A stretch of DNA of 64,000 nucleotides from Selaginella moellendorffii. Taxonomy: Eukaryota > Plantae > Lycopodiophyta. Below the pieces are notes generated by a model. That model saw nothing but the letters and a program-made list of their open reading frames with translations. It searched no databases and had not been told where the DNA came from. Positions 899-20,309 of the stretch are shown piece after piece (positions within the stretch are counted from its first letter, which is position 1; every line of letters starts with the position of its first letter). A program made the position numbers and the translations under genes. The stretch is from positions 2,177,544 through 2,241,543 of the forward strand of contig NW_003314269.1 of assembly GCF_000143415.4 (NCBI RefSeq), given 5' to 3'.

Positions 899-951
899 CC
901 TAGCCCTACTGGTTTAGGGTTTTACAAAATCTTCGATTAGGGTTTTAGGCT
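899..951. promoter_or_regulatory. Putative bidirectional promoter with two telo-boxes
   Basis: 53 bp between divergent ATGs; TAGGGTTT at 915-922 and 938-945. Confidence 0.6.
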
Positions 952-3116
952 ATGGCTGCGAGGTGTCTGGCGAGCGCGCTGGTGCGAAGGCGCCCATGGA
1001 TGATGCCGATCGCGACTTCCTCCGCGATTACGAATCCAATGCGGTCGTTCTCGTCAGGCGCCGATGAGGAATTCCAGGTAGCGCCCGAAATCTTGAGGGA
1101 TCCGGCTATTGGCGACGCATTTCATCTGGATACAAGTAATTTGTGGACGATCTTTAGAGGTCCGGTGAGCCTTGTGGCTACGTTCCTGGACAGCGTTCAC
1201 GTTGCAACTGGAGCTCCCTGGTATGTTCGTGCTCGTTTCAAATATTTCGTTTTTACGTCTTTTCTTTTGATCAGGTGGATTGTCCTTGCGGGATCAACAA
1301 TTGCTGTGAGGGCGGCCCTTTTCCCTGTTACTGTGATCCAGCTACGAAAGACTGCCCAGCTCGCGCAACTCTCTGGAAAATGTAAGCTCCACTATGGCCT
1401 TTTGTGATCTCACTTCTCACACTTCACGTCCAGTGCCCTCGCCAGTTCCTCCTCCTGGGAGTGGTGTCACGCAGTTAGAGCAATTCAAGCTCTATTCTCA
1501 GAAACGAAAGGAGCTTGGAGTTCCCAGTCCTGCATGGTGTTTTGCTTCTCTTTTCGTTCAAGTAAGATTAGTAAGATTTTCATGAAAACAAAAAGATTTA
1601 CGTTTATTCTTTTCTCCACCAGGTGCCTATTTTCATATCCTGGACTTTAGCGATCAGAAACATGGCCATAAACAAGTACCCTGGATTTGAAACAGTCAGT
1701 AACAACTTTGGCTTTGTAAATATTTCTGATCCTTCTCCGCACAGGGTGGTGCTCTATGGTTTACAGACTTAACTGTTCCTGTCAGTGGAGATTTAGGAGC
1801 TCTCTTACCGATATCACTTTCCGTTGCATACATTTGTCATATCGAGGTAATTTTTGACTGGAGCTATTGTCAAATCTAGCGATTGTGCAGTAGGTGTCTT
1901 TGAAAGGAATTGAGCCAAAGCCCGGCATTGTGGGATCTTTGCTTTCGGTAAGAAAACTATTTTTCGAGCAGCGTACTTATGTTTCAAACAGTTCTACGGC
2001 TGGTGGCTGCGTTTCTGTGTGATTCCAGTCTGTATCTCGGGTTTTTATTTCCCTCAGGTATTTATAGCTTGGTTTGGTTCTGATCTTCAAGCTTTATTGC
2101 AGGGTGTTTTCATGTACTGGCTCCCGAACACTTTGTTCTCTCTTGCACAGGTATAAGCCGAGCAATTCTTATTCAGCTTCTTCGCGCTTGACGTTTATGA
2201 TTTCAGACACTATGTTTGAGAAGCAGCTATTTTCGAAAAAGATTAGGCTTGCCCGTGATGGTTGCACCTAAAGCTTCTGCTGATCCTCGTGCCTCTCAAA
2301 GCGAGACTCTTATAAAGGTAAGTTTATCTTAGTTCGAATGTGGTGAACTTTTATAATTTGCGCAGCTCGCTGCGGAACATGTCGTTCGCAAAAACCGTGA
2401 CGCAGCAGTCCAATGTTTGAAGTGAGTGTTCGTGATTGACATCTGGTATCACGTGTCTTTCATCGTTGAACTGGCAGGGCTGCTCTGAAAAAAGATCCGG
2501 AAAATGCGACAGCCTATTTCGCATTGGGAAAGTTGCATACAGACGCCAGTGAATGGGCTGAAGCAACAGACTTGCTTGCTCAAGCAGCTTCAAAGGTGTC
2601 GTTGTATCCGAAGCGTGTGTAGCTTGTCTCAATTTACTGTGTTTATCTGTTTAACAGGCCAAGGACAATAAGCTTCAAATTTCAGCCTACTTGGCGCTTG
2701 GAATCGCTCTGTACAAGCAGGTTGGTGTTTTCCATCGATGGCTACCGAATTCACTATATTGCTTGCAGGGTAAAATAGGCGAGGCCACAGCTGCGCTCAA
2801 GTGCGTGGCTAGCATGGAAGAACCTCAGGATGGCGCTTCCCGAAAGAAATATAATGTGGCCCTTGTGACTTTGGGAAGGTACCTATCTTTCAAACACGCT
2901 GATCTCTGAACTCTTTCTTCCTTTTCTTATTTCAGCTTGTTGAGCCAGGACGGACAGAAATTTGCAGCCTTGGAGTATCTTGAGCGGGCTGCACGGTACG
3001 ATCCCAAGGTTGGCGACCTTTATGTGGAACAGATCAAGAAGGAACTTGCTCAAGCTAAAGAAGTTGAGGAGGTCGAGGAAGCTGATGTTCAGACAGGAGA
3101 CAGTCATGTACGATGA
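952..3116 (+). CDS. OXA1/ALB3/YidC-family insertase with C-terminal TPR (OXA2-like, mitochondrial)
   Basis: Mitochondrial-type presequence. Exons read FLDSVHVATGAPW-WIVLAGSTIAVRAALFP, VQVPIFISW..AIRNMA..YPGFETGGALWFTDLT, QGVFMYWLPN, then TPR-like helices (ALEYLERAARYDP). Stop TGA at 3114-3116. Confidence 0.85.
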
Positions 3117-3188
3117 AAAGTTGAGGGCAAGAATTGGTAAGTGTTACGTACATTACAGTATTGACAATATCTTCTGCCAATTAGATCT

Positions 3189-5387
3189 TTAAACTGCGAA
3201 TAATCCTTGGATGGACTCTTTCATGGTGATCAAACGGAATTTTGTGTTGAAAGTGCTCCGGTTGTTCTTCCGGAGCCCTGGTAGGTGTACATTCGTTATA
3301 TATTCATTCCATCTGATTGACCCGATGTCAAAGCCAAAACCTTCTTTTTCTTCGGGCAGCATTTGCTCGTACAGTGTTTTGGTGTTCGTTATATCAAACC
3401 TGTAAGCAGGTTCAAAGCTGTTACAACACAGTTGAATCTCGGAGAAGATAGCTCACCGTCCTTTGTAAAAAGTGTAAGCGGAATAAGTTTCTACGAGCTG
3501 ATCAAGTCTCTCTGCGAGGATAGCGGTTCGTTTGGCAGAGTTTTGAAGCTTGCGGCTGCCAGATAACCGTGCAACCTGAAAAGAATAACAAGAATTTAAG
3601 GCAAGAAAGTTTGGAGGTCTTACATGGATCGGGAGGCTGTAGCAGAGAAACTTATGGACGGAGAATGCCAACTTGTTGTCGTAGAACGTCATCCTGCGCT
3701 CGACAGGATTTCCGTTTTCATCCAAGACTGGATTGGACTGGAAATACTCTTCGGTACACACTGCTAGTTCCCGGAACGTCAAGGGGTTCACTGTTGAAGA
3801 TCCAACGTGATAGACACTGAGGCCGGGGCGTCCAGCGTGAACGCTCATGGCTGCCAGAAGTGAGTTCACAACCATGTCTGCTGGAATCTACAGGCCACAA
3901 ACGAACTTGTCAGCGGACAGCAGTGACAAAGCAAAATGGCAACTCACGACATCGAGGACGCAGTCCGGATCAGCATAGAAACCCGTCAGGTGGCCAAGTC
4001 CATAGGCAAGAAGCATTGGGTCCATCATCCTGTGTAAGCTCACATTGTTTGCTCGCTATGCAGGTGGGAATACTTCACGTACCTTGTGCCTTGGATCCAG
4101 CCTCCAAATGGCTGTGCGGAAGTTCCTTCCACCACCGACGGGCGAAGAATGACCACGGGAACGTCTCCTCTGCTTTGGGTGACGAGCGTTTCGCCCATAG
4201 CTTTGGTGAAAACGTAAGTGTCTTGCCACCCGTGAAGCTGAGCTCTGCGGCATTACAAGTCAAGGCCAACACCTCCCAGTGACCGCGTACCTTTGCATTC
4301 CCAGCTCTTTTAGTTCCTCAGAAGTGGCTTTTATGTTTCTTACAGAGTCAATCTCTTTCCACACGTCCAGAGGAGGAGCTATACCGTTCGACATGCTAGC
4401 GAGAGGTTTTTCTAAAATTCTTCCTTGTCTGAGCCCGTTCGAGTATGCTGTCACCCAGATGTATCAAAACGAGAATCGTGTGCGGCTTGCGGCACTTACC
4501 AGTGGAGACGTGCAGGAACAACTGCAACCGTGAGCACTTCTTTGCAAACTCCAACAGGTTTAGCGGTCCTTTCGTGTTGACGGCCAGAGCTACGTCGTAT
4601 CTTACAGCCAAGAAAGGGAAATTGCAAAATCAGCGCAAGACTGGTACGTAGCCGCGAAGAACCAACCTTTCAAAGAACTTGGTGGTCGCGGCTGAGTTAA
4701 CCACAACGTCCAACTGGCTGAGGAGCTGCTCCTTGGTGTGCTTCTCGAGTCCCAGATCGTTCTTCTCCACGCTTCCGGGGATGGCAACGAGCTTCTCAAG
4801 CATGAACTGGCGATAGTCGGCCCCATACTCCTCCCGAATCAGCTCAAACAGCCTCGACTCCAGTATCTGCCAGGGAAAAATCAGATTCAGAGAAACAAAA
4901 ACTCCGGCAGGGAGGCGACTTACATCCTTCTCCAGTCTCTGCCGAGCCTTCTCGTGACTGTCAGCGTGCACGAGAAGGTAGATCTTGCTCACTTTCGGCT
5001 GCGCACGCAGGATCTTCTCAACAAGCACTGGAAAAACAAAGAGAGCAGACTCATACACGACGTTTCGAGCAGAACGCCAGTGCCACCTTTTCCGAGGAAG
5101 CCCGTAGCTCCAGTGATGAGGATTCGTTTGTTCTCCAAGAACGGGAGGATCCCAAGCCGCTGCTGCTCGACATGGTCAATCCGTGGAAAGGCAGTAGCAG
5201 TAGCAACAGCAGCAGTGGCAACATTGTCGCGCGTTATGTCCAGCGCGCAGCACAAGGCACGACGGCGAGTGGACGAAACCCGGTGCGTCTCCAGCCGCGA
5301 AGAACAAGCTATCGAGTTCCGACCACCGGAAGAACCAGAACCAGCTGACCGATAGATTGCCGCCTCGAAAGACAGGGAGGGAGCCAT
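3189..5387 (-). CDS. Fatty acyl-CoA reductase (alcohol-forming, MS2/FAR2-like) with probable plastid transit peptide
   Basis: [10 protein letters not shown] Rossmann motif, [20 protein letters not shown] (YxxxK), IPADMVVN and a C-terminal sterile domain. Ser/Arg-rich N-terminal extension. About 9 exons; stop TAA at 3189-3191. Confidence 0.93.
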
Positions 5388-5648
5388 TCTTCTGCACAGC
5401 AGGAGAGCATAGAATCAAGCGTTTTATCCTGTTGAGTGTTGGAGGAGGTCACGAGGTGGGAACACAATTCGATCGCATGTACAAGTCGGCAAAAAAGTTC
5501 CGGAGTGTTTGTGTCCACGCACTTGACATTCGATCTGCAATTACGCCCAAGCTACCCTCCACCACGCGATAGGTGGATTCAATTGACACCTGTGAAAGCG
5601 ATCCGGCGAGCGAGAGCTATCGATCTTCAAAGGAAATAGAGAGAAGTA

Positions 5649-5653
<5 letters not shown>

Positions 5654-5685
<32 letters not shown>
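5654..5685. repeat. (CT)n microsatellite
   Basis: About 16 perfect CT units upstream of the FAR gene. Confidence 0.95.
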
Positions 5686-5690
<5 letters not shown>

Positions 5691-6316
5691 GTGTAGTTGT
5701 TTTTTGTGCCGGGGAAGAGAGATCGAGGACAGGGTTCGGTTTGGAGGTCAAGCTTGGGTCCCTGCATCATAAAAACACAAGGAAGCGCAACACGCTGCTC
5801 TTCGAATACTTTCTCACCGCAGTGTTTTGAGCTGATTCGCTTTGACGTTTGCTCGATTATAGGTGGAAACGCTACACCTTCAATTGCGATAGGCTACAAG
5901 CCGTGTAGTCTTCCGCTGAATGCCTTTTGAAGTACTTTCTAGTCGGTAGAAATATGGTGGCATATACCATGGAAGCTTTGGTGTCTGATTCATATAATTA
6001 GTTAATTCTTGAGTGCTAGGGAACAAATTCTGGTAAAATGTTTTTTGTGCCCAATTTCAAAAGTTGGTACCAATTGAATGATCAAATATTTCTTTAACTA
6101 CCTGTTAAAGGACACTACTGGGGAGAAAAAGAAGGAAAGATGTTGGAAAGTGGCAAACAGGTTTCATGCGAGTGGGGCATTGGAATTCTGCCTGACTTAC
6201 GATTGTCAAAAAATAAATACGTAACTTAAAACTAAACTAGGTTAAGAATAGATTTAATGTGGAAAGATAAAAGTTTAATGGCCAAATTTGTACATAAAAA
6301 TGAATTAGTTCTTCCT

Positions 6317-7287
6317 TTAGTCTGCTGCATTAACAAGTCTCTTCGCAATTCCTGCTGTATATCTCCCTTGGTGCTCAGCCAACTCAAGCTCGGTCTGTGT
6401 TGGTAGCCTGGAACCATCACCAGCAAAAGTTCCAGCTCCATATGGGGAGCCACCCCTCAAATCATCCAGCTTAAACATTCCAGCACCAAATGTGTAGCCG
6501 ATCGGGATAAACACCATGCCGTGATGAGCAAGTTGAGTGATCGCAGTCCATCTAGAAGCAAGTCATAAGTTCAGAAGATCACTCGAAGCAAAAGATGGAA
6601 ATAACTCGGACTGACTTACGCCGTCGTTTCTTGGCCACCACCTTGGGTTCCACTGCTCACGAAGAATCCGGCTGGTTTTCCAGCCAGCTTTTGCTGCTGC
6701 CACAAACTCCCAGTAGAATCGAAGAAAGCTTTCATCTGAGCGGCCATGGCACCGTAACGCGTGGGGAATCCAAAGAGAAAGGCGTCGGCGGCTACGAGCT
6801 GTGCAGCGGTGATGGTTGGAATGGACTCATCCTTCGGCGGAGCGTGCATCTTGTCCAACACCGCCTGTGACAAGTTCTCCGCCACTCTAAAGAGAAATCC
6901 CTCCGCTCCATCCACGCTATCCACGCCTTGCTTGATCTTCTTGGCCAGAGCCTCGACGTGACCATACATGGAGTAGAATCTAAGCAAGCGTCGAGTGAGA
7001 ATGCGCTCTATCTTAGACCGAGATCAAAGATCGCAGGAGAAGAGAAAAAAAACTCACATAATGTAGACTTTGATGGTGGTTTCGGGAGGAGAAGATGGTG
7101 CTACCGCCGCTTCCACCGCTGGATCGTCCTCATTCTCGACTTGGGCTTGCTGGATTTCGTCCGGACCGCATTGGGTCTGTGGCGGATCATCTCCTGGATG
7201 ATCGCCTCCATCGGGCTTGGAGGAGAGCGGCGAGGAGCTCTTGTTCTTCCTGGATTTGCTGGGTATGCATCCGCCCCCTCTGCCCAT
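6317..7287 (-). CDS. NAD(P)H:quinone oxidoreductase, FQR1-like (WrbA/flavodoxin-like)
   Basis: [29 protein letters not shown] and [16 protein letters not shown] motifs. [12 protein letters not shown]-terminus (likely acylation). Three exons. Confidence 0.95.
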
Positions 7288-7512
7288 GACCTAAATGCCC
7301 CTCACTCGATCATCCCACTGGCACCCAGACAAAAGAGAAGAAGAAAAGGAGGATTTCTTCTTTTTTTTTTTTTGCTCGCTGCGTGGGATAATGTGCTATG
7401 ATGCAGTTTGTCTGTCCTTTAGCGAATTTGGCATCGTAAATCCAACTTAGCATTTCTTGCCAATGATCAACTTGTCTACTGACGTACCGTACGTAAGAAT
7501 TCAAGCATTATG

Positions 7513-8345
7513 CATTCCCAGCTCTTGAGCAGTGGCTTTTACGGAATTGATCTCTTTCCACACGTCCAGAGGAAGACCATTCGACGTGCTAGCGAGAGGT
7601 TTTTCTTAAATTCTTTCTTCCTTTTCTGAGCATCACCCAGATTTGCGGCACCTATTAACCGTGGAAACGTGCAAGAACGACTGCAACCGTGAGCACTTCT
7701 TGCGGTCGCTTACACAACCCAGAAAGATCGCAAAAAGACCTGACAATCAGCGCAACTTGCAACTCGTAGGTGGGAGCAAGAGTTAACCACAACGTCCAAC
7801 AGGCTTCCTTCCTCGGATCGATCACAATCGGAACACATTTCTGAGCGATTGGGACTGATGAATCTTCCCAACAGATCCCTTTGAAGTGTAGACCCTTGTG
7901 ACGCCAGCTGAGCTCTGAGAAGTTTGTCCGTGCTCCACACAATTACACTTAAAACAGATGATGTTTGATCGATGTTTTCTCGAGGAAACAACTAGCTGAA
8001 GGTGAAGATCTCCACCTAAGCTTTCTGGCAGTGTGTATGAAATTTGTAGCATTAACACGAAATATGGTGATATATACTGGCAATGAGAGTGATCTAAGAA
8101 CTCTTCCACCTGCGAAACTTCCACCTTTCTATAGTATTTTAGCGAGCTGCAATGGAAGGTGCCTTTGGCAAAGTTTTGGACCATGACAACGTGATATCGC
8201 AAAAAGAAGAGGTTTCAAGGATGTCGCGGTTGGGTAATTTAATCCTTTCTCCCCCGCGTCGTCGTGGACTTTTGCAAGTGTCCATGTTAAATTCCTGGAG
8301 AGCGGCTACACACAATCGTGCCTGCGCGGCGTACAAAGTCGGCAA
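7513..8345 (-). pseudogene. Degraded duplicate of the neighbouring FAR gene
   Basis: 7513-7800 aligns by eye to 4296-4714 (e.g. ATCTCTTTCCACACGTCCAGAGGA, ACTGCAACCGTGAGCACTTCTT, GAGTTAACCACAACGTCCAAC), intron sequence included, with many deletions. 8310-8345 resembles the FAR upstream region 5462-5492. Confidence 0.8.
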
Positions 8346-8437
8346 CTTGGGTGTTTCCTTCGTGAAATCTGGGTTTTATACGCAGCGCTGCCTAGCCTAG
8401 GATCGACCGAGCTAGGGGAATTTTGGTAATCCAATCG

Positions 8438-9154
8438 ATGGAAGAATCACAGCAGCAAAGCAGCAAATTCGATGCTCCCCCATCGCCCTATGTCCCGTCG
8501 CGTGTCTACTTGGCCCAGATCTACTGGAAGAAGCCCGCGATTGTGGTGCTCCGGGTGCTCCAATTCATCTTCTCGCTCATCGCATTCTCGGTCATGGCGG
8601 ATGTTCTTCACGACGTCCAAGGATCAATCAAATCCTTGAGGTATGTCCCAATTCTCTGTGAATGCCCCAATTCCCTCCCTCTCTCGCGCGATCTTGCACA
8701 CACCAATGAACGACGGACTCAAAGTTGCGAGTGCTCTTCTTTGCAGCTACACGGTGGCCATCGGTGTTTTGGCATGCGCGTACGCTTTGGCGCAGCTAAG
8801 TTTCTCGCTTTGGTGCGTGATCCGCGGCGCCACGTCTTCGGCTGGGGTGACTCCGCTGTACCAATACGCGACATTCATCTGCGACCAGGTCCAAACCAAC
8901 GCAATGCCGATGAGATTGATTCTCATGGTTGATCTTTTCTTTGGCAGATGAGCACTTACTTCCTGATCTCGGCCGCATCCGCCACAGCCACACTGATCGA
9001 CGTTTCCGGGGTGTGCGGTTCGAACGGGTCCGGCACCAACCTGTGCTCAAGATCCACTGCCTCCGTCACCTTTGCCTTCCTGGCGTTTCTCGCCTTCTCT
9101 GCCTCCTCGGTTCTCACAGGCTATTATCTCGTCAAATGCATCTTGAAAGCCTGA
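8438..9154 (+). CDS. CASP-like (MARVEL/DUF588) four-TM membrane protein
   Basis: LRVLQFIFSLIAFSVMA, YTVAIGVLACAYALAQ, FICDQMSTYFLISAASA and C..STASVTFAFLAF motifs. Typical three-exon CASPL structure. Confidence 0.92.
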
Positions 9155-9552
9155 AAAATCTGTTAAAACACAAAAATCAAAAACCCATTTTTTATATTTT
9201 TTTAATTTTGCTAAGACTAGTTTTTGGAAGGATACTGGAGGATAAGAAATCTGATCTCGCACAGGAGCTTGCTGACGATGAGATATACACTCACCAGCAT
9301 TTGCAAAAGCTGACAACTATGATATACTATTCACACCTGTACAAAAATCTTACAAACAGTGATAGTAGAGAAAGGAAGGAAGCAAATGCCAAGCAAACAA
9401 CTCCTACCTCCCAGGGCCAGCTACATTAACTCTATCATCTTCAGGTATTTGCTCGTAATTTCACCACCACTCCAAACTTTTAAGACTTTCGATCGCCTCT
9501 CTTAAATAGATGAGATATTTTCTTCTTGCATGCAGCCATGGCACCTGGAGAT

Positions 9553-10541
9553 TTACGGGTGGTGCCACTTGTTCTTGCTCTCGGGGCTGTACATCCTGAA
9601 AATCCAGGAACACAAGAAAGGATGAGAAAAAAGTTTTGACTCGGAAACTACAACCATCGACATGGAAGAAGCTCTCCCTGATCTTTCTTCAGGTGTCCAA
9701 GACACTGATCACTACCCTGCGTTTGTGTATGAGAAGTGATTGGTAGCGATTCTTACGATCTATGGACACCGAATCTGCTAAACTCTATCTTATCTAGAGA
9801 AACAAAAAAGTTCCTTAGAGCTCGTAAGAAATCCATGCAAGAAACACTAAAGCATGAAGAGATAGAGAACCAGCTAGAGCTCGGACGAACAAGGGCTAGA
9901 AACCAAGAACACGAGAGAGACGGCTTACCAGTCATACACAGACGGAGAGTTTGGTGTCACATTGTCGTAGCGAGCGGAGCCCTGGCGCTCCACTGCCCGC
10001 GCTCGCCCGGCTCCCGGATGGAACACCGATCGCCAAACGTTATCTTTGGGCGTGGTTCCTGTTCACGAGAAGAGCACAGTTAGATTCCAAAGACTCCCTC
10101 AAAATCTCGACAAGATAGCAAAGAATCGTGGGAGACAAGGCGAGGACTAGCAAGATCTTGCAGATATTACCAGGAGATCCAGCCATAGAAGATGGGGAGC
10201 CGACGCTAGAGGCGGCTCCCGTCGGGGTAGCCGGCGCGGACTCGTCGCCAAAGCTGGCCGATCGGATCAGCGGCGGGGGGCGGATGTTGATGCTCTGCGT
10301 GACCATGGTGCTGGAGCGCTGATATTTCGGGTCTCGCGCGCCAGGGGCGCCGAGCGGATCACCTGCCACAAAGATCGACCGTGTGAGCAAGAAAACGATC
10401 GCAATATCGCTGCCAGAGACCATCCAAGCCAGTGAGATCCCTGGCGACCGCCTTGGCATTCTTGTTGCGCAGCATTCCCAGGCCTCGATCCGGCTGAGGC
10501 CCGGCCACCACATCGTCCCACAGCTTGTCAAGAAGCCCCAT
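9553..10541 (-). CDS. Dormancy-associated/auxin-repressed protein (DRM1/ARP family), two candidate terminal exons
   Basis: MGLLDKLWDDVVAGPQPDRGLGMLR, DNVWRSVFHPG, PNSPSVYDW. Last exon is either 9716-9689 (VVISVLDT*) or 9595-9553 (MYSPESKNKWHHP*). Confidence 0.93.
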
Positions 10542-11632
10542 GGTGGATCAAAGACGAGCGATCGAGAGAGAGAGAAGACGCTGTAAACCCTCTCAAGAAG
10601 AAGAGGAAGAAGAAGAAGAGAAAACAAACAAGCTCTCTCTCTAAAGCCCTACCATGTCCCCCAAGCATCTTGCGATCGCAGCCGTCCACCCAATTACCCG
10701 CCATCACCGTGGCGTCCATCCGCCGGCCACGTCAGCCCGCCAGATATCGCTATCGTACGGCGAGAATATTCACCCTGTAGAGAGACCTTATCCGGTTCCC
10801 GACCGTCGGATCCGCGCCATCACGTGCCCATCGACGACTGCTTGCTGTCACGCGCGACGATTGGCCCAGATCACCATTTACCCACGGCGAAATCTTTCAC
10901 CCGGCCAGGAAACGAATCCGTCAAGATGCCAAAAGCATCTACGAGCGCATCCAACGGCGGGGAATTTTTCCGCGTGGAAAAGGAAGGAAATATAAAATGT
11001 GGTCGCCCCCACCCCCACCAAAACCCTAAAAAAAGTGACAACACAATTGTGAGCTCAAACCACACAAAAACGCACACTCTCCACTGCCCTATCTGCTCCC
11101 CTGTTCGTGCCCTGTTGGGGGCGACGGTGGCGACGCTCAATGGGCTCTTCTTCCTCGCCCATCAGGTCGCCTTTCCAACGAGCTCCATCTCGCCTAGTTC
11201 TATCCTTTTCCTTGGTTTTGTCCCCTTTGTTTTTTTTTTTTTTTTTTCTCTCTACTCTTCGTCTGGGTCGTGAGGTGAATAGCTCTTAGGGCAACCAAGA
11301 GCTTGAGAGCTCTCCAGGGAGAGAGAGCTAAGTAACTCCTCTACTGTCTCAGAGCTTTCTAGCGAAAGAAGAAGAAGAACGCAGCAGCAGCAAAAAAAAA
11401 AAAGATTTTTTTTCCTTGCCCTTTTTGTCAATTGCCTGAGTAGTTCCTCCTTAGGTCTCTCCGTCACGGCCTTGCTTGCTTGTCCGCGCGAGAGAGAATT
11501 ATTTATCCATACTGTTCTTCCTCTTTCCTTCGTGATTTTTTTTTTTGCTTTGTTCTTCCTCTTCACTCGGTTGGTTCTTTGCATGGGAGGTGTTTAATCC
11601 CCTTGGAGCTGCTCCTCCACAGCAGTAGAGGA

Positions 11633-14182
11633 ATGGGGAAGCAGGGCCCTTGCTACCACTGTGGAATTACCAGTAAGTTCTCATCCATCACCATTAAGCT
11701 ACAAGGTTTGCCTTTGTATACTCTTTGTTTGGCTTTCTTGCAAACTTTGACGTGTTTCCTTCGTTGTAATGGACGTTGTGCTTTTGCTGCTTGTTTGTAT
11801 CACCACGATGATTGATACGAAACAGCTCGAAGGCAAAGCTATATGACATGGTTTTTATCTCTCTGTGTATCCTGGTCTCATAATCGAATCAAACTCGGTT
11901 GTAATTGCCAAAAATGCCAGCGAAGAAACAAAGTCTTGTGGAAAAACCTCTCCAAAGTTTGCTCCCTTTGATCTATAACTTACTCGTGTGCTGCTTCGTG
12001 TTTTTGTTTTTGCCATCTTTCCAGCAACACCACTGTGGCGGAATGGCCCCCCGGAGAAGCCAGTTTTGTGCAATGCCTGTGGCTCGAGGTGGCGGACTAA
12101 AGGCACGCTCATCAACTACATGCCAATGCACTCGGGCGGATTTGGAGTTGGGAGTGACAAAGCGAGATGGAACTCTAACCGGACCGCTCCAGAGAAGACG
12201 ATCATCTCGCGCAAGAGAAAGGAACCATCGGATGGAAACTCGGAGAGCGCTCTCTCGAAAACCAGCACGTATTTCTCCACCAGCGCGGAGGACGATGCCA
12301 GCACGCGATCGAGCCTCGGCTCTGAGGTTTCGACGTTCGATGGTCCCTTCTACAGATCGGCCGTCGCTCCTGGTAACTGGTTTTCACCGTTTTTCACCGT
12401 TTTCTCTTCGGCTGAACTCGTGAATTTCGTCCATGCAGTGCGTGGAACGCCTTGGGACACTCCAGTTCCATCTCGCAGGCGCACAAACATGTTCCGATCC
12501 CGGGCCTCCTCAGACAAAATCGCCAGGAACCTCGTCTCGCTCGAGGAGCAAGAGGTGTCGTCGGTGACATGCCCCGAGAATGGTGACGCTGTAGTTTTGT
12601 TCGAGACAAAGTCACCGCTGGTAGCGGTGGAGATTGGGCTTGGAAGTGTTTTTATCCGGCAGCCTGCGCAGCAAATCGCCCAGCAGCAGGAGCACGAGTC
12701 CGAGGCGAGCTCGTTGCTCATCGATAGTGGCACTAGAGGAGGAGGAGGAGCACACGAACTCGGTGAGGTTCCTGGTCAAAGTACCGGGCTCTACAATTCG
12801 GCCCCGTTGAGAGGAAAGGAGAAGCTCGCCATCGGCTACCAAAGACCCGAGACTCATTACAATCCCAGTAGAACGCTCTTGTAAGTATCTCTTTATTTTC
12901 TCTTTTCTAGTCTAGATTTCTCTATGAAGATGATTTGAAGCTTCTTGTCTTCCAGAGAAATTTTTCCCTACAACAAGAGAAATGTGCTGCAAAGCAAGCA
13001 GTCTCCACTCAACTTCCTGGAACTCAAGGCAAGCTTTCTCTATTCTCCTAAAAGGATTTACTGTAACGTGTTCTTTCGACACGATTGAACAGGATGTGAT
13101 TAATGCTGATACGTTTACCGAGCTATTGACGGATCAAGAGCAACTCCAGCTTCTAAAGTTCCTCTCCTCGGTGGACATCTCGCATTGTCCACAAAGGTAA
13201 AAACTTTCTCCTTTCTTTCTTAGTATCTGAGAAAGAAAACTAAGTGGAGAGCGCTCTCGTGCAGCTTGAGCAGCATGTTTAGCAGCTCCCAGTTCGAGAG
13301 GGCAGTGTCCAACTTTCAGCGGCTTCTTTCCGAAGGAACGTTCGACTCGCCCGAAGCTGGATCCAGTCCTCGCGTTTTGCAGCACTACCAGCAACTTCTA
13401 TCGGTCACGGACTTGGCAGCGTCCGGATGGGCCGAAAGCTTGTCTCAGCTTCAAAATCAAGCTCGAACTTCCAAGCGCCGGGCTGAGGTGAAACCAAACT
13501 TTCTCGTTCGCGTTTCCTTTTTTCATCTCTCTCCTACTTACGTTACAGCAGCCGCCGTGTGGCAAAGAGCACAAGCTTCTCAAGCCTCCCTGCGCAGGAA
13601 ATGCATCGCTGCTCGCGATCGAGAGTAAGAGACGAAAAGGTTTCTCTCGAGGACTCAAAACCATCTCTTTTTTTTTCTTTCTTTGTCTCTGAAGGGACGG
13701 ACGACTCAATCCTCCATGGAACTCACAAGCAACACGAGCTTAACTACGGGGTCTCTTCAAGCAGCTCGAAACCAAGCCAGGAATCATCCGGCCCCCGGCG
13801 AGCTACGACTTCCTCTTTCCTGCCCGAGTCCACGGCGATTCCAGCGCGAAAACCCGTGAAGAACAACCTCATGGAGGAGGGCCACGACAGCGGTGGCGAG
13901 CAGGACTTGCTCGTAAACGTCCCCTCGAGCATGTCCTTCCGCCACGACGCCGAGCTCCTGCTACTCCAAAAGCCACCATCCATGGATCATCTCAGGGACA
14001 AAGGAGGGAATGGAAACGGTGGGAGCAATGCGAGTGGAGGCGATTGCGCGGACTTGATCGTCACGAACACTTGGCATTCGACCGACTGGGATGGATTCTT
14101 GTGGACGAGCCCGGCATCGGCGAGAGGAGGAGGATCGACTAGAAGGCGGGTTCTTCCCAATGGAACCGTGCTCAATCCGTAA
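11633..14182 (+). CDS. GATA transcription factor, GATA26/27-like (N-terminal zinc finger plus ASXH/DEUBAD-like region)
   Basis: MGKQGPCYHCGIT/TTPLWRNGPPEKPVLCNACGSRWRTKG, WDTPVPSRRRT, EIGLGSVFIR, LTDQEQLQLLKFL..VD, MFSSSQFERAVSNFQRLLSEG. Confidence 0.93.
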
Positions 14183-14318
14183 GTAGCAAGAACGGGAACA
14201 CCGAAAAAAACGAAGAACAAAGAGAAAACGAAAAGTAATGTAACTTTTCCCGGTACATTTTGAATTTGCGAATATCCGCGCTATCTTGTCAAAGTCGCTA
14301 CAGTTTTTAGGGCTCTTC

Positions 14319-15149
14319 ATGGCGGGGCTGTTTGATACCCAGGCGGAGATCTACGCGGCTGCGCGCCCCGATTATCCGGATTCCCTCTTCGAATTCCTGG
14401 CGTCGGTTACGCACCATGGATGCGTGTGGGACGTGGGCACTGGAAATGGGCAAGCTGCGATCAAGGTAAGCCAAGCCGGGGTTTGTCTAGAATTTTTGGG
14501 GGTTTCTTAGCTCGCAGAGATCTTCGATCGAGTGATCGCGACGGACGTGAGCTCCCAGCAGCTCCAGCAAGCCCCGCAGCGCCCAAACATCAAATACGCC
14601 GTGACTTCCAAATCGATCACCCGCGACGAGCTCCACTCGGTGATCGGCCCCGACCACTCGCTCGACCTCGTCACCGTCGCGCAGGCCCTCCACTGGTTCG
14701 ACCTGGACGCCTTCTACGGCCACGTCGGCGCGATGCTCCGCCGTGGCGGCGACCGCCCGGGCGTGCTGGCCGCGTGGTGCTACCAGCTCTGCCACGTGGA
14801 CGCAGACGTGGACGCCGTCCTCACCGAGTTCTACGCGGCCACGTCGCCCTACTGGGCGCCACAGCGGCAGCTCGTGGACAACGGCTACCGTACAATCGAC
14901 TTCCCGTTTGAGCCGGTCGCGGGCCAGGCTAGTACGGGGCCGTTACGGTTCGAGTCGATCAAGCGGCTCAATTTGGGCCAGCTCTTGGCCTACTTCCGGT
15001 CGTGGTCCGCCGTACAGACCGCCATGGACAAGGGGGTGGCCATATTGGAGGAGTTTCGGCCGGCATTTGAGAAGAGCTGGGGCGGTGATCCTATGGTGGT
15101 GAAAACGGTGACTTGGCCTGTCCATCTTCTGGTTGGCAAGCCAAAATAA
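14319..15149 (+). CDS. SAM-dependent methyltransferase (Methyltransf_11, embryo-abundant-protein-like)
   Basis: [31 protein letters not shown] (motif I), [22 protein letters not shown]. One intron (14466-14510). Confidence 0.92.
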
Positions 15150-15391
15150 TTATCTTCAGCAGCGAGTTTTACAACTGGATGCAATAACTCTCCTCAATCA
15201 TCCCAGGTCTAAAATAAGTATTTAGACTAAAATATCAGCAGTTGGACCCTATAAGCTAAACCATATTTAAACCCTTAAACCAGCCGATCTGGCCAATCGC
15301 TTTCTCATGATCGAGCAAGACATTTGAAAACAAAGCTTTTATTTTGTGCTTGGTCCCGTACTGTACTACTCTTGGATATCAACGTCCACAA

Positions 15392-15700
15392 GTTTCCATA
15401 ACCATGCTCAGCACAGTTCTTTCCCGTCGGCTCCTCTCGATCCATCCATCAACATGGCGAGTTGCATGATCCTATCTCAAGCAGCAGCAGTCCCACTTCA
15501 TGGCCAACCAGAAGATGACCTTTGACGAACTGCAGGACTTCCTCGACGTGCATGTAAGTATATCGTATGATTGGCTGGATATTGATTGGCTGTGGTTACT
15601 ATGCATTTGTGGAGACTACGCACCGTTGTGGAACGCGAACTCACAAATCGGACCTCCTGGGTGACGAGGAAGGGAACAGCTACTGGGGATTCCTCCTCCA
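15392..15700 (+). pseudogene. Collapsed fragmentary copy of the downstream decarboxylase 5' region
   Basis: Colinear near-identical blocks to 15982-16565 (TCCATCAA.ATGGCGAGTT, CTATCTCAAGCAGCAGCAGTCCCACTTCATGG, GTGCATGTAAGTA intron donor, CCTGGGTGACGAGGAAGGGAACAGCTACTGGGGATTCCTCCTC), separated by deletions. Confidence 0.92.
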
Positions 15701-16055
15701 CTATAACATAAACAATATTTTGCAACATTATAATAAGATTGCATTTTCTGTGCAACGTTATTTTTCAATGCAACTTTGTAGTAATCCTTGTACCATCAAA
15801 AAATACCAATTTGAATATATACGGTGACACCTTACGATTTTGTATTCTTCCATCGCTGGCATCAAATAATGAATTTTATGGTCCCAATCCTTTACTTATC
15901 TGATTTCTTGAAAGGGACATTTGACCCTTCAAGCTAGAATTTTGCTCCACGCTTTTCTCGTGGTTGATCTTGCATATAAACAGTTTCCATTGCTCAGCAC
16001 ACACTAGTCCTTTTTCTCTCTTAGCATCGGGTTCTTGATCAGTCCATCCATCAAT

Positions 16056-17975
16056 ATGGCGAGTTCCATGAGTGATCTATTTCCCGCGCAGCGCGTTTCC
16101 CCTCCCACCACTGACGATTATGTCTATCCTCCACTTCCCAAAGCTCTCGAGGGTGTCAACTTCGATCTTGCGTCGAGTTTGAGGGACAGCAAGCTCCAAG
16201 AGCATCCGGCCAACCGTCTGCAAGCCCGCCAGGAGGCCCTTAACAAGTCGCTCGACTATCTCAAGCAGCAGCAGTCCCACTTCATGGGCTTCCAGGCCAA
16301 CCAGAAGATGAGCTTTGACGAACTGAATGACTTCCTCAACGTGCATGTAAGTAGATATTCATGGTCATTGTTATCAAATGTTTGCTCTGGTCCCAGATTA
16401 ACAACATTGGGGACCCATTTGTGGAGGGCACTTGCACCACCAACACCAAGTTCATGGAGCGCGCCGTGCTCGACTACTACGCGTCGCTGTGGAACGCGAA
16501 CTGGCCTCATAAATCGGCCCTCCTGGGTGACGAGGAAGGGAACAGCTACTGGGGATTCCTCCTCACCATGGGATCCACCGAAGGCAACATGTACGCACTG
16601 TGGAATGCCCGAGACTACCTCGGTGGCAAAATCCTCCTCATGGAATCCGGCGGAGACACAAAGAAGGCGGCGGCTCCGCGGCTTGTGTATCGCCAAGCAG
16701 CCGTGCCTCCAAATGCCAAGCCCAGGCAAGGAGCGCAGCTCCATTCCCAGAATGCTCCGACGAGTTTTGTGAGAACTACTTCTCGCCGGTTGCGTTCTAT
16801 TCGGAGGACACGCACTACTCGTTCGCAAAGGCGACCCGGCTCATCGCCATCCCCACTTTCGGAGTGGTGGGCGAGGAGAAGTACCCCGGGATGTGCCCGA
16901 TCACCCAAGATGGGAAGTGGCCGGACGAGGTCCCCTCGTACGAGGAGGGCCCCGAGGATGGAACCATCCACACCCAGTCTCTCGCGGAGCTAGTGCTCTT
17001 CTTTGCACGGAGGGGCCACCCCATCTTCGTTAACCTCAACTATGGCACCACCTTCAAGGGCGCCTATGATAGCGTCGTTAAGGCCATGGCCGCGCTCATG
17101 CCCATCTTCCAGTTCTACGGCCACGACAAGCGGGTCATCGACGCCGGCGGCAAGGAGAGTGTACGGACGGGATTTTGGATCCACGTCGATGGCGCACTCG
17201 GTGCTGCTTACATTCCGTATCTGAAGCTGGCCGCGGAAGAGGGCTGCAAGTTTGAGGATGGTGACGCTGTGGAAGTCGCGCCCGAGTTTGATTTCAGCCT
17301 GGACGCTGTGCATTCCATCTCAATGAGCGGGCACAAGTGGATGGGTGCGCCAATTCCATGCGGACTTTTCATGTCCAAGAGAAGGTGATGTTCTTACGCC
17401 ACCTGATGAAAAACGTTGACGAAAGTTGTGGCTCTTCCAGGTACCAAATCAACCCACCGAGCAATCCGATCTACACTGGCACTCCAGACACCACCTTTGC
17501 TGGCTCCAGGAATGGCCTTTCGGCGGTCTTCTACTGGAGCTACATCTCCAAGCATACACTCAAGCAGCATATTGACAAGGCCGTGAATTGCCAGGGGATG
17601 GCACGATTCATCTACAACACCATGAAAGAGCTGGGCAAGAAACTCAAGCTCGATCTCTGGGTTGCACGATCTCCACTCTCGCTCACTGTTCGTTTCCGGC
17701 AGCTCAACCATGACCTGGTGCTCAAGTACAGCCTCTCCAACGAGACGCTAGTGGTCAATGGTGTGCAACGCCTCTATTCACACGTCTTTGCAATGGAGCA
17801 TGTCACCAAGGAATTGGTGCTCATGCTAGTGGAGGACGTGATGAAGCTCGGACACAAAGCTTTCAAGGATTTATCGGATGGAATTGCAGGTGGAATCGAT
17901 GGACTGGCTACAGCGATGGATGCTCCTCTTGTTTCATGTGTGCCATTCCAGAGTCGTGGTTTCACCGGCAACTAA
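16056..17975 (+). CDS. Group II PLP-dependent amino-acid decarboxylase (HDC/SDC family, VlmD-like long form); reading frame broken near 16700-16775
   Basis: INNIGDPF, MGSTEGN, SEDTHYS, NYGTTFKGAYD, WIHVDGALG, SMSGHKW (PLP lysine), DTTFAGSRNG. Introns near 16347-16396 and 17385-17440; TATAAA at 15975-15980. The conserved blocks switch frame between the two ORFs. Confidence 0.88.
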
Positions 17976-20309
17976 AGAACTTGTGATCATAAATTACATA
18001 ATAAGTAAATAAATGTTGTTGGAGATTGCAATGGCGCTCAATATTACTAGAAATTGCCAAGTGGAATGCTAGGCGGTTAAGAAAGCTGCTTTTAAAAGAA
18101 GTCTCCCGCTGCTTAGTCACCAGCTCCCGCCTCAAGCACTATCTTTCCTTGGGTGATGTCCTTGCTTTGCCCACACTATTAAACCTCGAGTATGGCTATA
18201 AGCAATTCCCTTTGTGCACTTTAAATATTCCATATAAGGAAATTCCTTATGAAAATGGTGGATCATTTCAAATAAAATCTTTACAAATAGGTCATGAAGG
18301 CCCGGTTTTTTCTACGTATTTAAATTATCAAATACTTGTCCTTATGAAGAGCTATATTTTATATCCCATTTAGTTTATTTTTAGTTTGCTAGTTACACAA
18401 ATAATAAACGAGTGAACATTTCTGGGCATAAAAGCAAGCCACAAATGGCAATTTTTTTTAATTATTACTAGTGACATTATATTATATTCCATAATGCACT
18501 TCCTGCAATTTCTTGAGTAATATTTTTCTAGAAGAAAAAGTTGATATAAAGCTCTAGTCATACTCTTCTAGGAACAATTTTAAAATTCTTAATTAAATCA
18601 CATATTGATCAATTGGACTAATAAATAATACTAAACATGAATGGTGCTACTAGTAAAAAAACCAGCAATTATTTAGAAATCTTTTAAACAATTTAGAGAT
18701 TCTCTTGATAGAATTTATTGATTTCAATGTTGGTAATATGCTAAGTTTGTGTGTGACAATCCCAATGATTAATTATATTTCAACAACACTAAACCCATCT
18801 CCAAGCCTTTTTTCCACGTCTTGTGAGAGCTCAAATGAGTTCTTTCTTTCAGATTACTTGCATTTGTGCTGAGGAAGTCGAAAGATGGCGGAGTATGTAT
18901 CGAACAAGCTAAGCTTCATAAACAATGAGACCAAGTAGGCCTTGATTGATGCTCCTCTACGATCTCTAATAGCGGAGGATGTTTTTCTCAGGTTTAACGT
19001 AAACGGGCCACGATACCACTCTAAATCGTATCTGAGCAAACTGCTTGAGCCAGAAAATCTGCAATCGTTCTAATCCGTTCAACGGTTTGTTGGCTTGCTT
19101 AAGTATGTCTTTCCAATGGAACTGCACTAGGAGATTCACGGGCCAAGTAGCTTGAGAAAGAATGACAAAGGACTTTTAATTAACTATATTACCGTACATG
19201 GCAATTGAAATTGAAAGAAATAATAATGTTTTAAACATAATTATCTGCTTTTTTAGCGGATCACTATCTCGATCGTCTAGACGAGGGTTTTAGAGAGCAG
19301 TTCCCTCACGTCAACCTCAAGGCCGAGGTTCCCCAAGGTTCCAAGGAGAAAAGGAGCTTGCTCGATTGCTACGATCACTGCGAGCCCGGTCGATCGCAAA
19401 GCCAAACGCCAGGGGGGGATTGTCCAGGGACCGCGAGAGGAGGAGGAAAGCTGGAGCGGCCCTCTCGCACAGCCGGGAGGAAGCGAGATTGGCCACCACT
19501 CCATACCGAGCTCCGGTGAGCTCCTTGTAGTTGACGAGCCTGTCCAGCACCAAGTGTGGAAATCGACCAAGATGACGAGCGTGAGAGCCTCGAAATGCCA
19601 CCCGAATCGAGGAAACGGAATTTCTCTTCAATTGCGGGATTCAGGAATGGATTCCTGGTTTGAGCATCTCCCCGACCAGAAGTAAGGTTGTTTCTCGTCA
19701 TGGACGCCGGTTTGAGTCAATGCATGGTGCTTCGTCCAGATCCCTAGAGCAAATGCTGGAGTTCATGAGAAGCTCGCTGCTCAAGTTCGACTATGGGGGT
19801 GCAAGCTCGAGAACGCTGACAAGATCGTTGGCCAGGCGGTGACGATCGAGGGATTCAAGCTTGAAGATCTGAGCGACACCGAAGTGTTGCCTCTGCACTC
19901 CGCGGGGAATCCCAGCAAGTCAATGCAAGATCGTCGGAGTGGATGGCGGGAGAACAAACTTGAGGCTGGTTGGATTTGGCGACGCCGAGCTTGTGCAAGT
20001 TTTATCCTACGAAGGTATTGAAAGGTTGTCGATTTCGACAAGGATTTCCTGGCAATTCTCGACTCCAGGGGCAAAGATCACTTGGAACACTCAGTATGAA
20101 CATTTTTCCCGAGCTGGAGAAAACGGAAATGTCAAAACGCAGTGGCTGCAAATCTCAAATGTATTTTGAGGCGTTTTCTTCCGAACTTTGCTTGATCCTG
20201 GCTTGGTATTTAGATCGGCGAGTGTTACCTGCAGTTCTAAGAACTTCATGAGCTCTAGCGATTGAAAAACAAATACTTACTGTATGTGCTCGATCGTGTG
20301 GCTTGCCGC

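What the first reader, a model, noticed from the sequence alone, without database searches (positions are those of the whole stretch)
16056..17975. Bacterial-type (VlmD-like) PLP decarboxylase domesticated with spliceosomal introns
Seen: all group II decarboxylase motifs plus two GT-AG introns and a TATA box, embedded among ordinary plant genes, so it is not contamination. Knowledge (from memory): plant serine decarboxylase SDC1 is compact (GTEGNLHG, NIGTTVKGAVD, HCDGAL). This protein instead has long inserts and the motifs ERAVLDYYASLWNANWPH, WNARDYLGGK, NYGTTFKGAYD and LWVARSPLSLTVRFRQ, which I recall from Streptomyces VlmD (valine decarboxylase of valanimycin synthesis) and its relatives. 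Inference: a horizontally acquired amine-producing enzyme of unknown substrate in a seed-free plant.
Basis: partly seen in the sequence, partly recalled or inferred. Interest (0 to 1): 0.85.

Follow-up and report, generated by a model that had tools for sequence, protein, structure and literature searches.

The report
Bacterial-type amino-acid decarboxylase gene in spikemoss
This spikemoss gene makes an enzyme that strips CO2 from an amino acid; its closest studied relative is a Streptomyces methionine decarboxylase, not the usual plant enzymes, and a liverwort, clubmosses and ferns share it, so it entered plants long ago.

Summary
Window 16056-17975 (+) is a three-exon gene of Selaginella moellendorffii. 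Both GT-AG introns (50 and 56 nt) are spliced out in contigs of likely RNA runs, and all the quoted motifs are present.

The transcripts and a 93%-identical paralog both carry those 10 bases, which restore a 607-aa ORF.

The gene is already annotated as SELMODRAFT_439888 and LOC9635404. Both models hide the deletion with invented introns. Automatic names call it histidine decarboxylase, and call a paralog "serine decarboxylase 2".

The protein belongs to the long, bacterial MetDC-type branch of group II PLP decarboxylases. It is about 41% identical to Streptomyces L-methionine decarboxylase (PDB 7CIF) and about 20-22% identical to plant serine/alanine decarboxylases and bacterial HDC.

A bacterial origin is supported, but not as a Selaginella-specific event. 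In an ML tree, Selaginella, Diphasiastrum, Ceratopteris, Adiantum and the liverwort Riccia form one clade (99/96) nested among bacterial sequences. Selaginella, Adiantum and Riccia share a phase-0 intron at the same codon boundary. The gene therefore entered once, before land-plant lineages split. I found no seed-plant member.

The substrate is untested. I think it most likely acts on methionine or branched-chain amino acids, which makes the clade a candidate for the fern L-methionine decarboxylase purified in 1990. An earlier scan note only told me the genome is a spikemoss.

The parts
15975..15980 (+). TATAAA box about 30 nt upstream of the 5' ends of the transcript contigs
   Evidence: Read directly. 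The first contigs start at about 16007 (table 8).
16056..16346 (+). Exon 1 coding part (ATG at 16056, 97 codons), ending ...LNVH. It contains the GFQANQ motif whose Gln80 matches MetDC Gln64.
16347..16396 (+). Intron 1: 50 nt, GT-AG, phase 0, immediately before INNIGDPF. Adiantum capillus-veneris and Riccia sorocarpa have an intron at the same position and phase.
   Evidence: Spliced out in the contigs of X1 and X2, and in X3 and X7 with a near-identical junction. Shared position shown.
16397..17384 (+). Exon 2, the catalytic core: GSTEGN, DTHYS His240, HVDGALG Asp365, SGHK Lys414. In this assembly it is broken by a frameshift.
16721..16722 (+). Site of a 10-bp deletion in the assembled allele. 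Transcripts carry CCGCCCCAAG here and the paralog carries CCGTCCCGAG. With these bases the ORF is continuous (607 aa).
   Evidence: table 4.
17385..17440 (+). Intron 2: 56 nt, GT-AG, phase 2, between KR(R) and YQINPP. It is present in the Selaginella paralog and absent from the Adiantum and Riccia genes.
17441..17975 (+). Exon 3 coding part: the catalytic-loop Tyr in NPIYTG (matches MetDC Tyr421), GSRNG, the C-terminal domain and the family-typical ...P.QSRGF tail. The stop codon TAA is at 17973-17975.
17976..18024 (+). 3' UTR, running up to where the transcript contigs end.
   Evidence: table 8: X3 record 15 and X7 record 16 end at 18023/18024.
15359..15800 (+). Decayed partial copy of the gene's start, the end of exon 1, the intron-1 donor and a piece of exon 2. 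The same fragment lies upstream of the paralog, so it is older than the roughly 2.8-kb segmental duplication.

Best explanation
This is an expressed nuclear gene of Selaginella moellendorffii for a cytosolic-looking, roughly 67-kDa PLP-dependent group II amino-acid decarboxylase of the long MetDC type. That type is otherwise bacterial.

Inferred mechanism, by homology to Streptomyces MetDC: PLP is held as an internal aldimine on Lys414, stacked on His240 and anchored by Asp365. A neutral aliphatic L-amino acid forms the external aldimine and CO2 leaves. The loop Tyr in NPIYTG protonates C-alpha, releasing a primary amine. The most likely substrates are methionine and/or Val, Leu or Ile, which would give 3-methylthiopropylamine or isobutyl- or isoamylamine.

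Evolution: the family entered the plant lineage once from a bacterium, before liverworts, lycophytes and ferns diverged. It gained an intron before the INNIGDPF motif and was inherited vertically. It duplicated repeatedly in ferns and Selaginella, and I found no member from seed plants.

The copy assembled in this window carries a 10-bp frameshifting deletion in a variable surface loop. The mRNAs found in public runs have the intact frame.

Shown here: gene structure, splicing, the deletion, family placement, plant monophyly, the shared intron and conservation of catalytic residues. Inferred: the substrate, the direction and date of transfer, and loss in seed plants.
For: - Splicing and the 10 extra bases are seen in contigs of 3-4 studies. 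The repaired ORF has 607 aa and no internal stop.
- The same 10-nt block is present in paralog L010 and in LOC9655838.
- PDB sequence search: L-methionine decarboxylase 7CIF matches the three catalytic pieces at E 5e-54, 2e-28 and 7e-27. SDC matches at 1e-7 to 1e-6.
- The AlphaFold model of paralog P0161 has pLDDT 84.7 and pTM 0.89. Its best Foldseek hits are the eight MetDC chains (E about 1e-47, 41% identity). SDC/AlaDC and HDC follow at E about 1e-22 and 20-22% identity.
- The Atlas structure search gives TM 0.82 to a cyanobacterial cluster and 0.62 to the plant SDC cluster.
- The NCBIfam HDC equivalog scores 193 bits against a cutoff of 305.
- All 33 invariant and 68 of 70 near-invariant family columns are kept, including Q80, H240, D365, K414, the loop Tyr and R453.
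- dN/dS against the paralog is 0.33.
- ML tree (LG+C20 PMSF, 62 rows): the plants form one clade at 99/96, and the lycophytes at 97/97. The plant clade sits inside a set of bacterial clades from Cyanobacteriota, Myxococcota, Acidobacteriota and Bacillota. The actinobacterial MetDC-like clade and true HDCs branch earlier.
- Bacterial gene context of nearby hits is shown.
- A shared phase-0 intron occurs in Selaginella, Adiantum and Riccia.
- Plant members are named.
Against: - No enzyme assay exists for any plant member. Gln64 is conserved across the whole family, including members that may use other substrates, so it does not fix the substrate.
- The plant clade is not closest to the actinobacterial enzymes with known activity; identity to them is only about 41-45%.
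- The nodes that place the plants inside bacteria have moderate support (90/94, 87/68, 81/80), and the donor phylum is unresolved.
- Absence from seed plants, mosses, hornworts and algae rests on top-120 hit lists and on the 150 best cluster representatives. Many unnamed Logan and ENA sequences could not be assigned to organisms.
- The assembled allele here is frameshifted. The probable second haplotype's RefSeq model (LOC9655838) goes out of frame in exon 3, so the sequenced clone may lack an intact copy at this locus.
Confidence: 0.72

Rival explanations
1. A recent transfer from an actinomycete (VlmD-like donor) specifically into Selaginella.
For: The best PDB match is a Streptomyces enzyme. 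The quoted motifs are shared with Streptomyces homologs such as P0011.
Against: Diphasiastrum, Adiantum, Ceratopteris and Riccia have orthologs that form one clade with Selaginella at 99/96. They share intron 1. The actinobacterial clade is not sister to the plants. Bacterial hits from cyanobacteria and myxobacteria are as close or closer, at 48-50% identity.
Confidence: 0.04
2. The gene was inherited from the cyanobacterial ancestor of the plastid (endosymbiotic gene transfer) or from an even older eukaryotic ancestor, and then lost many times. It would not be a later horizontal transfer into the land-plant line.
For: Cyanobacterial proteins (Nostoc, Microcoleus, Oscillatoria) are among the closest relatives, at 55-58% identity to the fern proteins. 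The plant clade sits in an unresolved polytomy that includes them. Two family members lie on long ENA contigs with sparse, short ORF calls that might be eukaryotic.
Against: No algal or seed-plant member appeared in any search. The plants are not specifically sister to cyanobacteria. The scenario needs very many independent losses.
Confidence: 0.12
3. The locus in this window is a dying pseudogene, and only the paralog on GL377667.1 is functional.
For: The assembly has a 10-bp frameshifting deletion. In the deep run X3 the window's own SNP variants make up only about 12% of the depth, e.g. 523 of 4203 at 16903. That would fit a poorly expressed or NMD-degraded allele. S. moellendorffii also has clearly degenerate copies (SELMODRAFT_408374 and 402494). 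The LOC9655838 model is out of frame in exon 3.
Against: Contigs about 99% identical to this locus, against 93% for the paralog, are abundant, spliced and in frame from about 16082 to 18024 in three studies. All conserved residues are intact. dN/dS is 0.33. The deletion could be an assembly error or a single null allele.
Confidence: 0.25
4. It is a histidine or serine decarboxylase, as the automatic database names say.
For: UniRef and JGI name family members 'histidine decarboxylase' and RefSeq names the paralog 'serine decarboxylase 2'. HDC is the best NCBIfam model.
Against: The HDC equivalog score is 193 bits against a cutoff of 305. Identity to solved HDC and SDC is only about 20-22%. The only characterised enzyme I could compare from this long branch is a methionine decarboxylase (PDB 7CIF). 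VlmD, a valine decarboxylase (PMC7794544), is said from memory to be similar to MetDC.
Confidence: 0.1

Closest known systems
L-methionine decarboxylase (MetDC, EC 4.1.1.57) of Streptomyces sp. 590, PDB 7CIF/7CIG/7CII/7CIJ/7CIM
   Same: The two align over almost the full length at about 41% identity, and MetDC is the top hit by both sequence and fold. Both are long (557 against 607 aa). The inserts relative to HDC/SDC match. The PLP Lys, the Gln64 equivalent (Q80) and the Tyr421 equivalent are conserved.
   Different: The plant protein is not in the actinobacterial clade. Its surface loop after WNARDYLGGK is about 20 residues longer, and that loop holds the deletion. It has two spliceosomal introns, its activity is untested, and it is a plant nuclear gene.
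Valine decarboxylase VlmD of Streptomyces viridifaciens (valanimycin pathway)
   Same: From memory of Hayashi et al. 2017, MetDC is similar to Streptomyces valine decarboxylases. VlmD is a promiscuous decarboxylase of aliphatic amino acids (PMC7794544), which is the kind of chemistry proposed here.
L-methionine decarboxylase purified from the fern Dryopteris filix-mas (Stevenson, Akhtar & Gani 1990, Biochemistry 29:7631; cited in PMC9737665)
   Same: It is a PLP enzyme from a fern. Ferns carry several genes of this clade. The only other characterised source of this activity that I found is the Streptomyces enzyme, which is the closest solved relative of this clade.
   Different: As far as I know the fern enzyme has no published sequence, so the link is an inference. 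Dryopteris itself was not sampled here.
Plant serine decarboxylase SDC1 / tea alanine decarboxylase (PDB 8JG7, 8JIJ)
   Same: Same group II fold and the same HDC-like subfamily. Some motifs are shared (NN.GDPF, S-x-H-K).
   Different: Identity is only 20-22%, with E 1e-7 against 5e-54. SDC is about 190 residues shorter and lacks the family-specific N-terminal helix region, the inserts and the C-terminal ...GRGF tail.

Membership tests
Long MetDC/VlmD-type branch of HDC-like group II PLP decarboxylases | Group II decarboxylase domain with the PLP-binding Lys in S-x-H-K, the pyridine-N Asp and the stacking His | tested here: met
   PF00282 matches. K414, D365 and H240 are conserved. The predicted fold matches.
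Long MetDC/VlmD-type branch of HDC-like group II PLP decarboxylases | Closer to MetDC than to short HDC or plant SDC over the full length, including the branch-specific inserts and termini | tested here: met
   E 5e-54 against 1e-7. Identity 41% against 20-22%. The alignment runs end to end with bacterial members 560-630 aa long and includes the C-terminal GRGF tail. The ML tree agrees.
Long MetDC/VlmD-type branch of HDC-like group II PLP decarboxylases | Equivalents of MetDC Gln64 (substrate pocket) and Tyr421 (acid catalyst) | tested here: met
   Q80 in GFQANQ and the Tyr in NPIYTG align with them. The roles of these residues come from memory of Okawa et al. 2021. A deposited Q64A mutant structure, 7CIG, appears. 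The paper itself is not held.
Long MetDC/VlmD-type branch of HDC-like group II PLP decarboxylases | Decarboxylation of methionine or branched-chain amino acids | not testable with these tools
   This needs a recombinant enzyme assay.
VlmD (valine decarboxylase) specifically | Direct sequence relationship to S. viridifaciens VlmD (UniProt Q84F32) | not tested
Plant serine decarboxylase (SDC1) clade | High similarity to characterised SDC and a compact length of about 420-480 aa | tested here: not met
   Identity to 8JG7/8JIJ is 20-22% with E 1e-7. The protein has 607 aa. The Atlas gives TM 0.62 to the SDC cluster against 0.82 to a cyanobacterial cluster.
Histidine decarboxylase equivalog (NCBIfam NF002748) | Score at or above the curated cutoff of 305 bits | tested here: not met
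   P0161 scores 192.7 bits, Adiantum 223 and the MetDC-like P0011 203. True HDCs P0123 and P0126 score 373 and 365.
Bacterium-to-plant horizontally acquired nuclear gene | Integrated in the nuclear genome: spliceosomal introns, plant neighbours, expressed | tested here: met
Bacterium-to-plant horizontally acquired nuclear gene | The plant sequences form a clade nested inside bacterial diversity | tested here: met
   Plant clade 99/96. The nesting nodes are 98/91, 90/94, 87/68 and 81/80, rooted on true HDC. The FastTree of 221 rows agrees. Support for nesting is moderate.
Bacterium-to-plant horizontally acquired nuclear gene | Absent from the other eukaryotes and plant lineages that vertical descent would predict | tested here: inconclusive
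   Named eukaryotic hits came only from Selaginella, Diphasiastrum, Adiantum, Ceratopteris and Riccia. Hit lists are capped and many sequences are unnamed. Two ENA contigs have an unclear host.

The most novel reading that the evidence does not exclude
This clade is the missing gene family for the plant L-methionine (aliphatic amino acid) decarboxylase activity purified from the fern Dryopteris filix-mas in 1990. On this reading, an enzyme acquired from bacteria by the ancestor of land plants still makes volatile or defensive primary amines, such as 3-methylthiopropylamine or isobutylamine, in a liverwort, lycophytes and ferns. No seed-plant member turned up here, which would mean it was lost there.
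Probability: 0.35. Interest if true: 0.65.

Novelty: new member of a known kind. Interest (0 to 1): 0.5.

Why it matters
It corrects the identity of a plant gene family that databases label "histidine decarboxylase" or "serine decarboxylase 2". It shows that a bacterial MetDC-type enzyme has been a nuclear gene of seed-free land plants since before liverworts, lycophytes and ferns diverged.

It gives concrete candidate genes for an enzyme activity from ferns that, as far as I know, has no sequence (EC 4.1.1.57). One expression-and-assay experiment could test that.

It also flags that both public gene models of this locus are wrong. They hide a 10-bp deletion behind invented introns, and LOC9635404 thereby loses a conserved motif.

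The value is limited because the gene is already annotated, ancient bacterial genes in early land plants are a known phenomenon, and the substrate is still a guess.

Tried and rejected
- **A third short intron to explain the frame change.** I listed all GT/GC...AG pairs that join the two frames without a stop. None looks like an intron, and the transcripts show a 10-nt indel instead.
- **L010 (P0161) as the other haplotype.** Rejected: only about 2.8 kb around the gene is shared, at 91-93% identity, with no flanking synteny. It is a dispersed paralog.
- **Contamination.** Rejected by the introns, spliced transcripts and plant neighbours.
- **Riccia P0045 grouping with bacterial P0033 and P0037.** FastTree showed this at support 17. 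It did not survive the site-heterogeneous ML analysis, and the shared intron contradicts it.
- **Dead ends.** The look-up of encoding contigs had no record for the Diphasiastrum model P0312 or for LOC9655838 (P0277). So I could not check the lycophyte intron or the second haplotype's exon-3 frameshift on DNA. The MetDC structure paper (PMC7888583) is not held. The organisms behind the mRNA-like Logan sequences P0282, P0317 and P0290 and the ENA cluster P0331 could not be named.
- **Paper searches.** Searches for locus tags, for methionine decarboxylase with Selaginella or Dryopteris, and for HGT with Selaginella and decarboxylase or pyridoxal found no description of this plant clade. Nor did the plant PLP_deC survey or the Ceratopteris genome paper. 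The large HGT catalogues for land plants could not be checked.
Full report
**What is in the window**

Reading 15500-18500 and its ORFs shows a plus-strand gene:
- ATG at 16056 and exon 1 to 16346;
- a 50-nt GT-AG intron at 16347-16396;
- exon 2 at 16397-17384;
- a 56-nt GT-AG intron at 17385-17440;
- exon 3 to the TAA stop at 17973-17975.

Pfam finds Pyridoxal_deC. NCBIfam finds histidine decarboxylase as the best model for the three catalytic pieces, always far below its cutoff.

Earlier scan notes call the genome a spikemoss. This was confirmed. GenBank SELMODRAFT_439888 (P0162) and RefSeq LOC9635404 (P0182) of Selaginella moellendorffii, both on a 3.67-Mb scaffold, are identical to the window's translation except around the frame break.

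The neighbours are ordinary plant genes: a GATA factor, two PPR proteins, a MIP1-type protein and a retroelement RT.

**Expression, splicing and the frame break**

Exon 2 changes reading frame near 16720. No plausible intron joins the two frames.

I laid Logan contigs of four small runs from four studies on 15300-18300. The tool only guesses that these runs are RNA, but their contigs are spliced. The result:
- Both introns are removed.
- Contigs begin near 16007, about 30 nt after the TATAAA at 15975-15980, and end near 18024.
- Three runs carry ten extra bases (CCGCCCCAAG) after 16721. The fourth, very deep run has its contigs break exactly there.

Ten bases restore the frame and give a 607-aa ORF with no internal stop.

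The paralog on GL377667.1 (L010, protein P0161, named "serine decarboxylase 2") has ten bases at the same site. LOC9655838 (P0277) encodes the same restored peptide stretch.

The assembled allele therefore has a 10-bp deletion. It lies in a variable surface loop that is about 20 residues longer than in MetDC.

Both public gene models hide the deletion with invented introns. One of them deletes the conserved WNARDYLGGK region.

The contigs are about 99% identical to this locus and carry SNPs typical of LOC9655838. Examples are Q59K, I98V and the 16847, 16903, 16952 and 17179 changes in runs X3 and X7. LOC9655838 lies on the 6.95-Mb scaffold, and that scaffold also carries the counterpart (P0147) of a degenerate copy (P0007) found on the window's scaffold. 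The two scaffolds are therefore probably the two haplotypes.

The LOC9655838 model leaves the frame after NPIYT in exon 3, yet no contig shows an indel there. I could not fetch that locus. Whether the reference clone has an intact allele is unresolved, but intact mRNA clearly exists.

The dispersed paralog L010 shares only about 2.8 kb with the window (15359-18171, 91-93% identity). It has both introns, and dN/dS against the window gene is 0.33.

**What the protein is**

Against PDB sequences, the three catalytic pieces hit L-methionine decarboxylase of Streptomyces sp. 590 (7CIF) at E 5e-54, 2e-28 and 7e-27. Plant serine decarboxylase and bacterial HDC reach only 1e-6 to 1e-10.

An AlphaFold model of the intact paralog has pLDDT 84.7 and pTM 0.89. 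By Foldseek it matches the eight MetDC chains first (E about 1e-47, 41% identity). Tea AlaDC, Arabidopsis SDC and Photobacterium HDC follow at E about 1e-22 and 20-22% identity.

The ESM Atlas agrees, with TM 0.82 to a cyanobacterial cluster and 0.62 to the plant SDC cluster.

The HDC equivalog model scores 193 bits against a cutoff of 305. Real HDCs in my hit set score about 370.

The protein aligns end to end with bacterial proteins of 560-630 aa, including an N-terminal SPPT.D stretch and a C-terminal ...GRGF tail.

It keeps all 33 invariant and 68 of 70 near-invariant family columns. These include:
- Lys414 (PLP), Asp365 and His240;
- Arg453;
- Gln80, which matches MetDC Gln64;
- the loop Tyr, which matches MetDC Tyr421.

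The roles of Gln64 and Tyr421 are from my memory of Okawa et al. 2021. The paper is not held, but a deposited Q64A mutant structure appears.

There is no N-terminal extension beyond the bacterial proteins, so I expect a cytosolic enzyme. That is an inference.

**Relatives and origin**

An exhaustive HMMER scan of 1.84 billion cluster representatives with the 220-aa core found only 321 proteins at E<1e-3. The best non-Selaginella hits are 50-56% identical.

Word-indexed searches with a family profile, with P0161 and with an Adiantum protein gave more than 1000 to about 2000 relatives at the E-value thresholds used. Those that are named come from Cyanobacteriota, Actinomycetota, Myxococcota, Acidobacteriota, Bacillota and Eremiobacterota. 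Four unnamed close hits sit in clearly bacterial gene neighbourhoods.

The eukaryotic members that can be named are:
- S. moellendorffii, with at least two near-intact loci plus degenerate copies;
- the lycophyte Diphasiastrum complanatum;
- the ferns Adiantum capillus-veneris, A. nelumboides and Ceratopteris richardii, each with several genes;
- the liverwort Riccia sorocarpa, with two genes. GCA_046195345.1 was identified through a preprint, and R1sor_015323.

A FastTree of 221 rows and a site-heterogeneous IQ-TREE analysis of 62 rows (LG+C20+F+G4 PMSF) both recover one plant clade, at 99/96 in the latter. Inside it:
- Diphasiastrum plus Selaginella are supported at 97/97;
- Riccia joins a fern group that also holds three mRNA-like sequences of unknown species.

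Rooted on true HDCs, the actinobacterial MetDC-like clade (98/96) branches off before a set of bacterial clades, among which the plant clade sits. The nesting nodes are supported at 90/94, 87/68 and 81/80. The donor phylum is not resolved.

Exon mapping adds independent evidence. The Adiantum gene has a 2400-nt intron and the Riccia gene a 455-nt intron. Each is that gene's only intron, is in phase 0 and lies exactly between ...L[ND][TV][HE] and [IV]NN[IV]GDPF. That is the same place and phase as Selaginella intron 1. Selaginella intron 2 has no counterpart in the other two genes.

Together these results point to one entry into the plant lineage before liverworts, lycophytes and ferns diverged, followed by vertical inheritance and duplication. 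No seed-plant, moss, hornwort or algal member appeared. This absence is only as good as capped hit lists and unnamed sequences allow.

**Function**

The two characterised enzymes I know of on this long branch are:
- Streptomyces MetDC, which makes 3-methylthiopropylamine;
- VlmD, which acts on Val, Leu and Ile and is promiscuous on small aliphatic amino acids (PMC7794544). I place VlmD on this branch from memory of Hayashi et al. 2017 and could not compare it directly.

L-methionine decarboxylase was also purified from the fern Dryopteris filix-mas (Stevenson, Akhtar & Gani 1990; citation confirmed). As far as I know it was never sequenced.

Ferns carry several genes of this clade. The simplest hypothesis is therefore that the clade encodes that activity. 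The Selaginella enzyme would then decarboxylate methionine and/or branched-chain amino acids. This is an inference, and I give it roughly even odds or less for the exact substrate.

**Novelty**

The gene is annotated but misnamed. I found no paper that links plant genes to MetDC or VlmD, or that lists this family as a transfer. I could not inspect the large HGT catalogues for land plants.

It is a new member, in fact a plant clade, of a known enzyme kind. It is also one more case of an ancient bacterial gene in early land plants, with a testable link to a fern enzyme that, as far as I know, was never sequenced.

Its Selaginella-specific, VlmD-centred interpretation needs the corrections given above.

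Noticed in passing
window 15359-15800: A decayed partial copy of the gene lies upstream. It has the start region, the end of exon 1 with the intron-1 donor, and a piece of exon 2. The same fragment sits upstream of the paralog L010 (7347-7706), so it predates the roughly 2.8-kb duplication.
   Followed up: partly
window 16600-16810 (public models SELMODRAFT_439888 and LOC9635404): Both database gene models bypass the 10-bp deletion with artificial introns. They remove 16 and 40 residues. LOC9635404 loses the conserved YALWNARDYLGGK region.
   Followed up: yes
S. moellendorffii LOC9655838 (P0277), 6.95-Mb scaffold; corresponds to window ~17470-17490: This is the probable second haplotype, about 98% identical at the protein level. 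It has the intact 10-nt stretch, but its RefSeq model leaves the frame after NPIYT in exon 3. Transcript contigs with this allele's SNPs show no indel there. The locus DNA could not be fetched.
   Followed up: partly
L004 8001-10441 (Riccia sorocarpa, P0045): One of the two Riccia copies has Pro instead of the Gln that matches MetDC Gln64 (LGFPGVV), and it sits on a very long branch. The other copy (P0053) keeps the Gln. This could mean a changed specificity or a decaying copy. Ceratopteris KP509_17G003300 also has altered motifs (SSEQKF in place of SGHKW).
   Followed up: no
L012 5001-6911 and L013 5001-6821 (ENA long-read metagenome contigs of 478 kb and 82 kb): Intronless family members are surrounded by sparse, short ORF calls with no Pfam hits. 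This looks more like eukaryotic or otherwise unusual DNA than a typical bacterial neighbourhood. The host is unknown.
   Followed up: no
L002 822-7785: In one bacterial contig the decarboxylase lies next to a flavin-dependent halogenase-like gene and a 1320-aa LodA-like amino-acid oxidase. This may be a small amine-tailoring cluster.
   Followed up: no
window 44000-52000 and 54694-55860: There is a very AT-rich block (26-37% GC against about 45-54% elsewhere) next to a reverse-transcriptase ORF. It is probably a retroelement-rich stretch.
   Followed up: no
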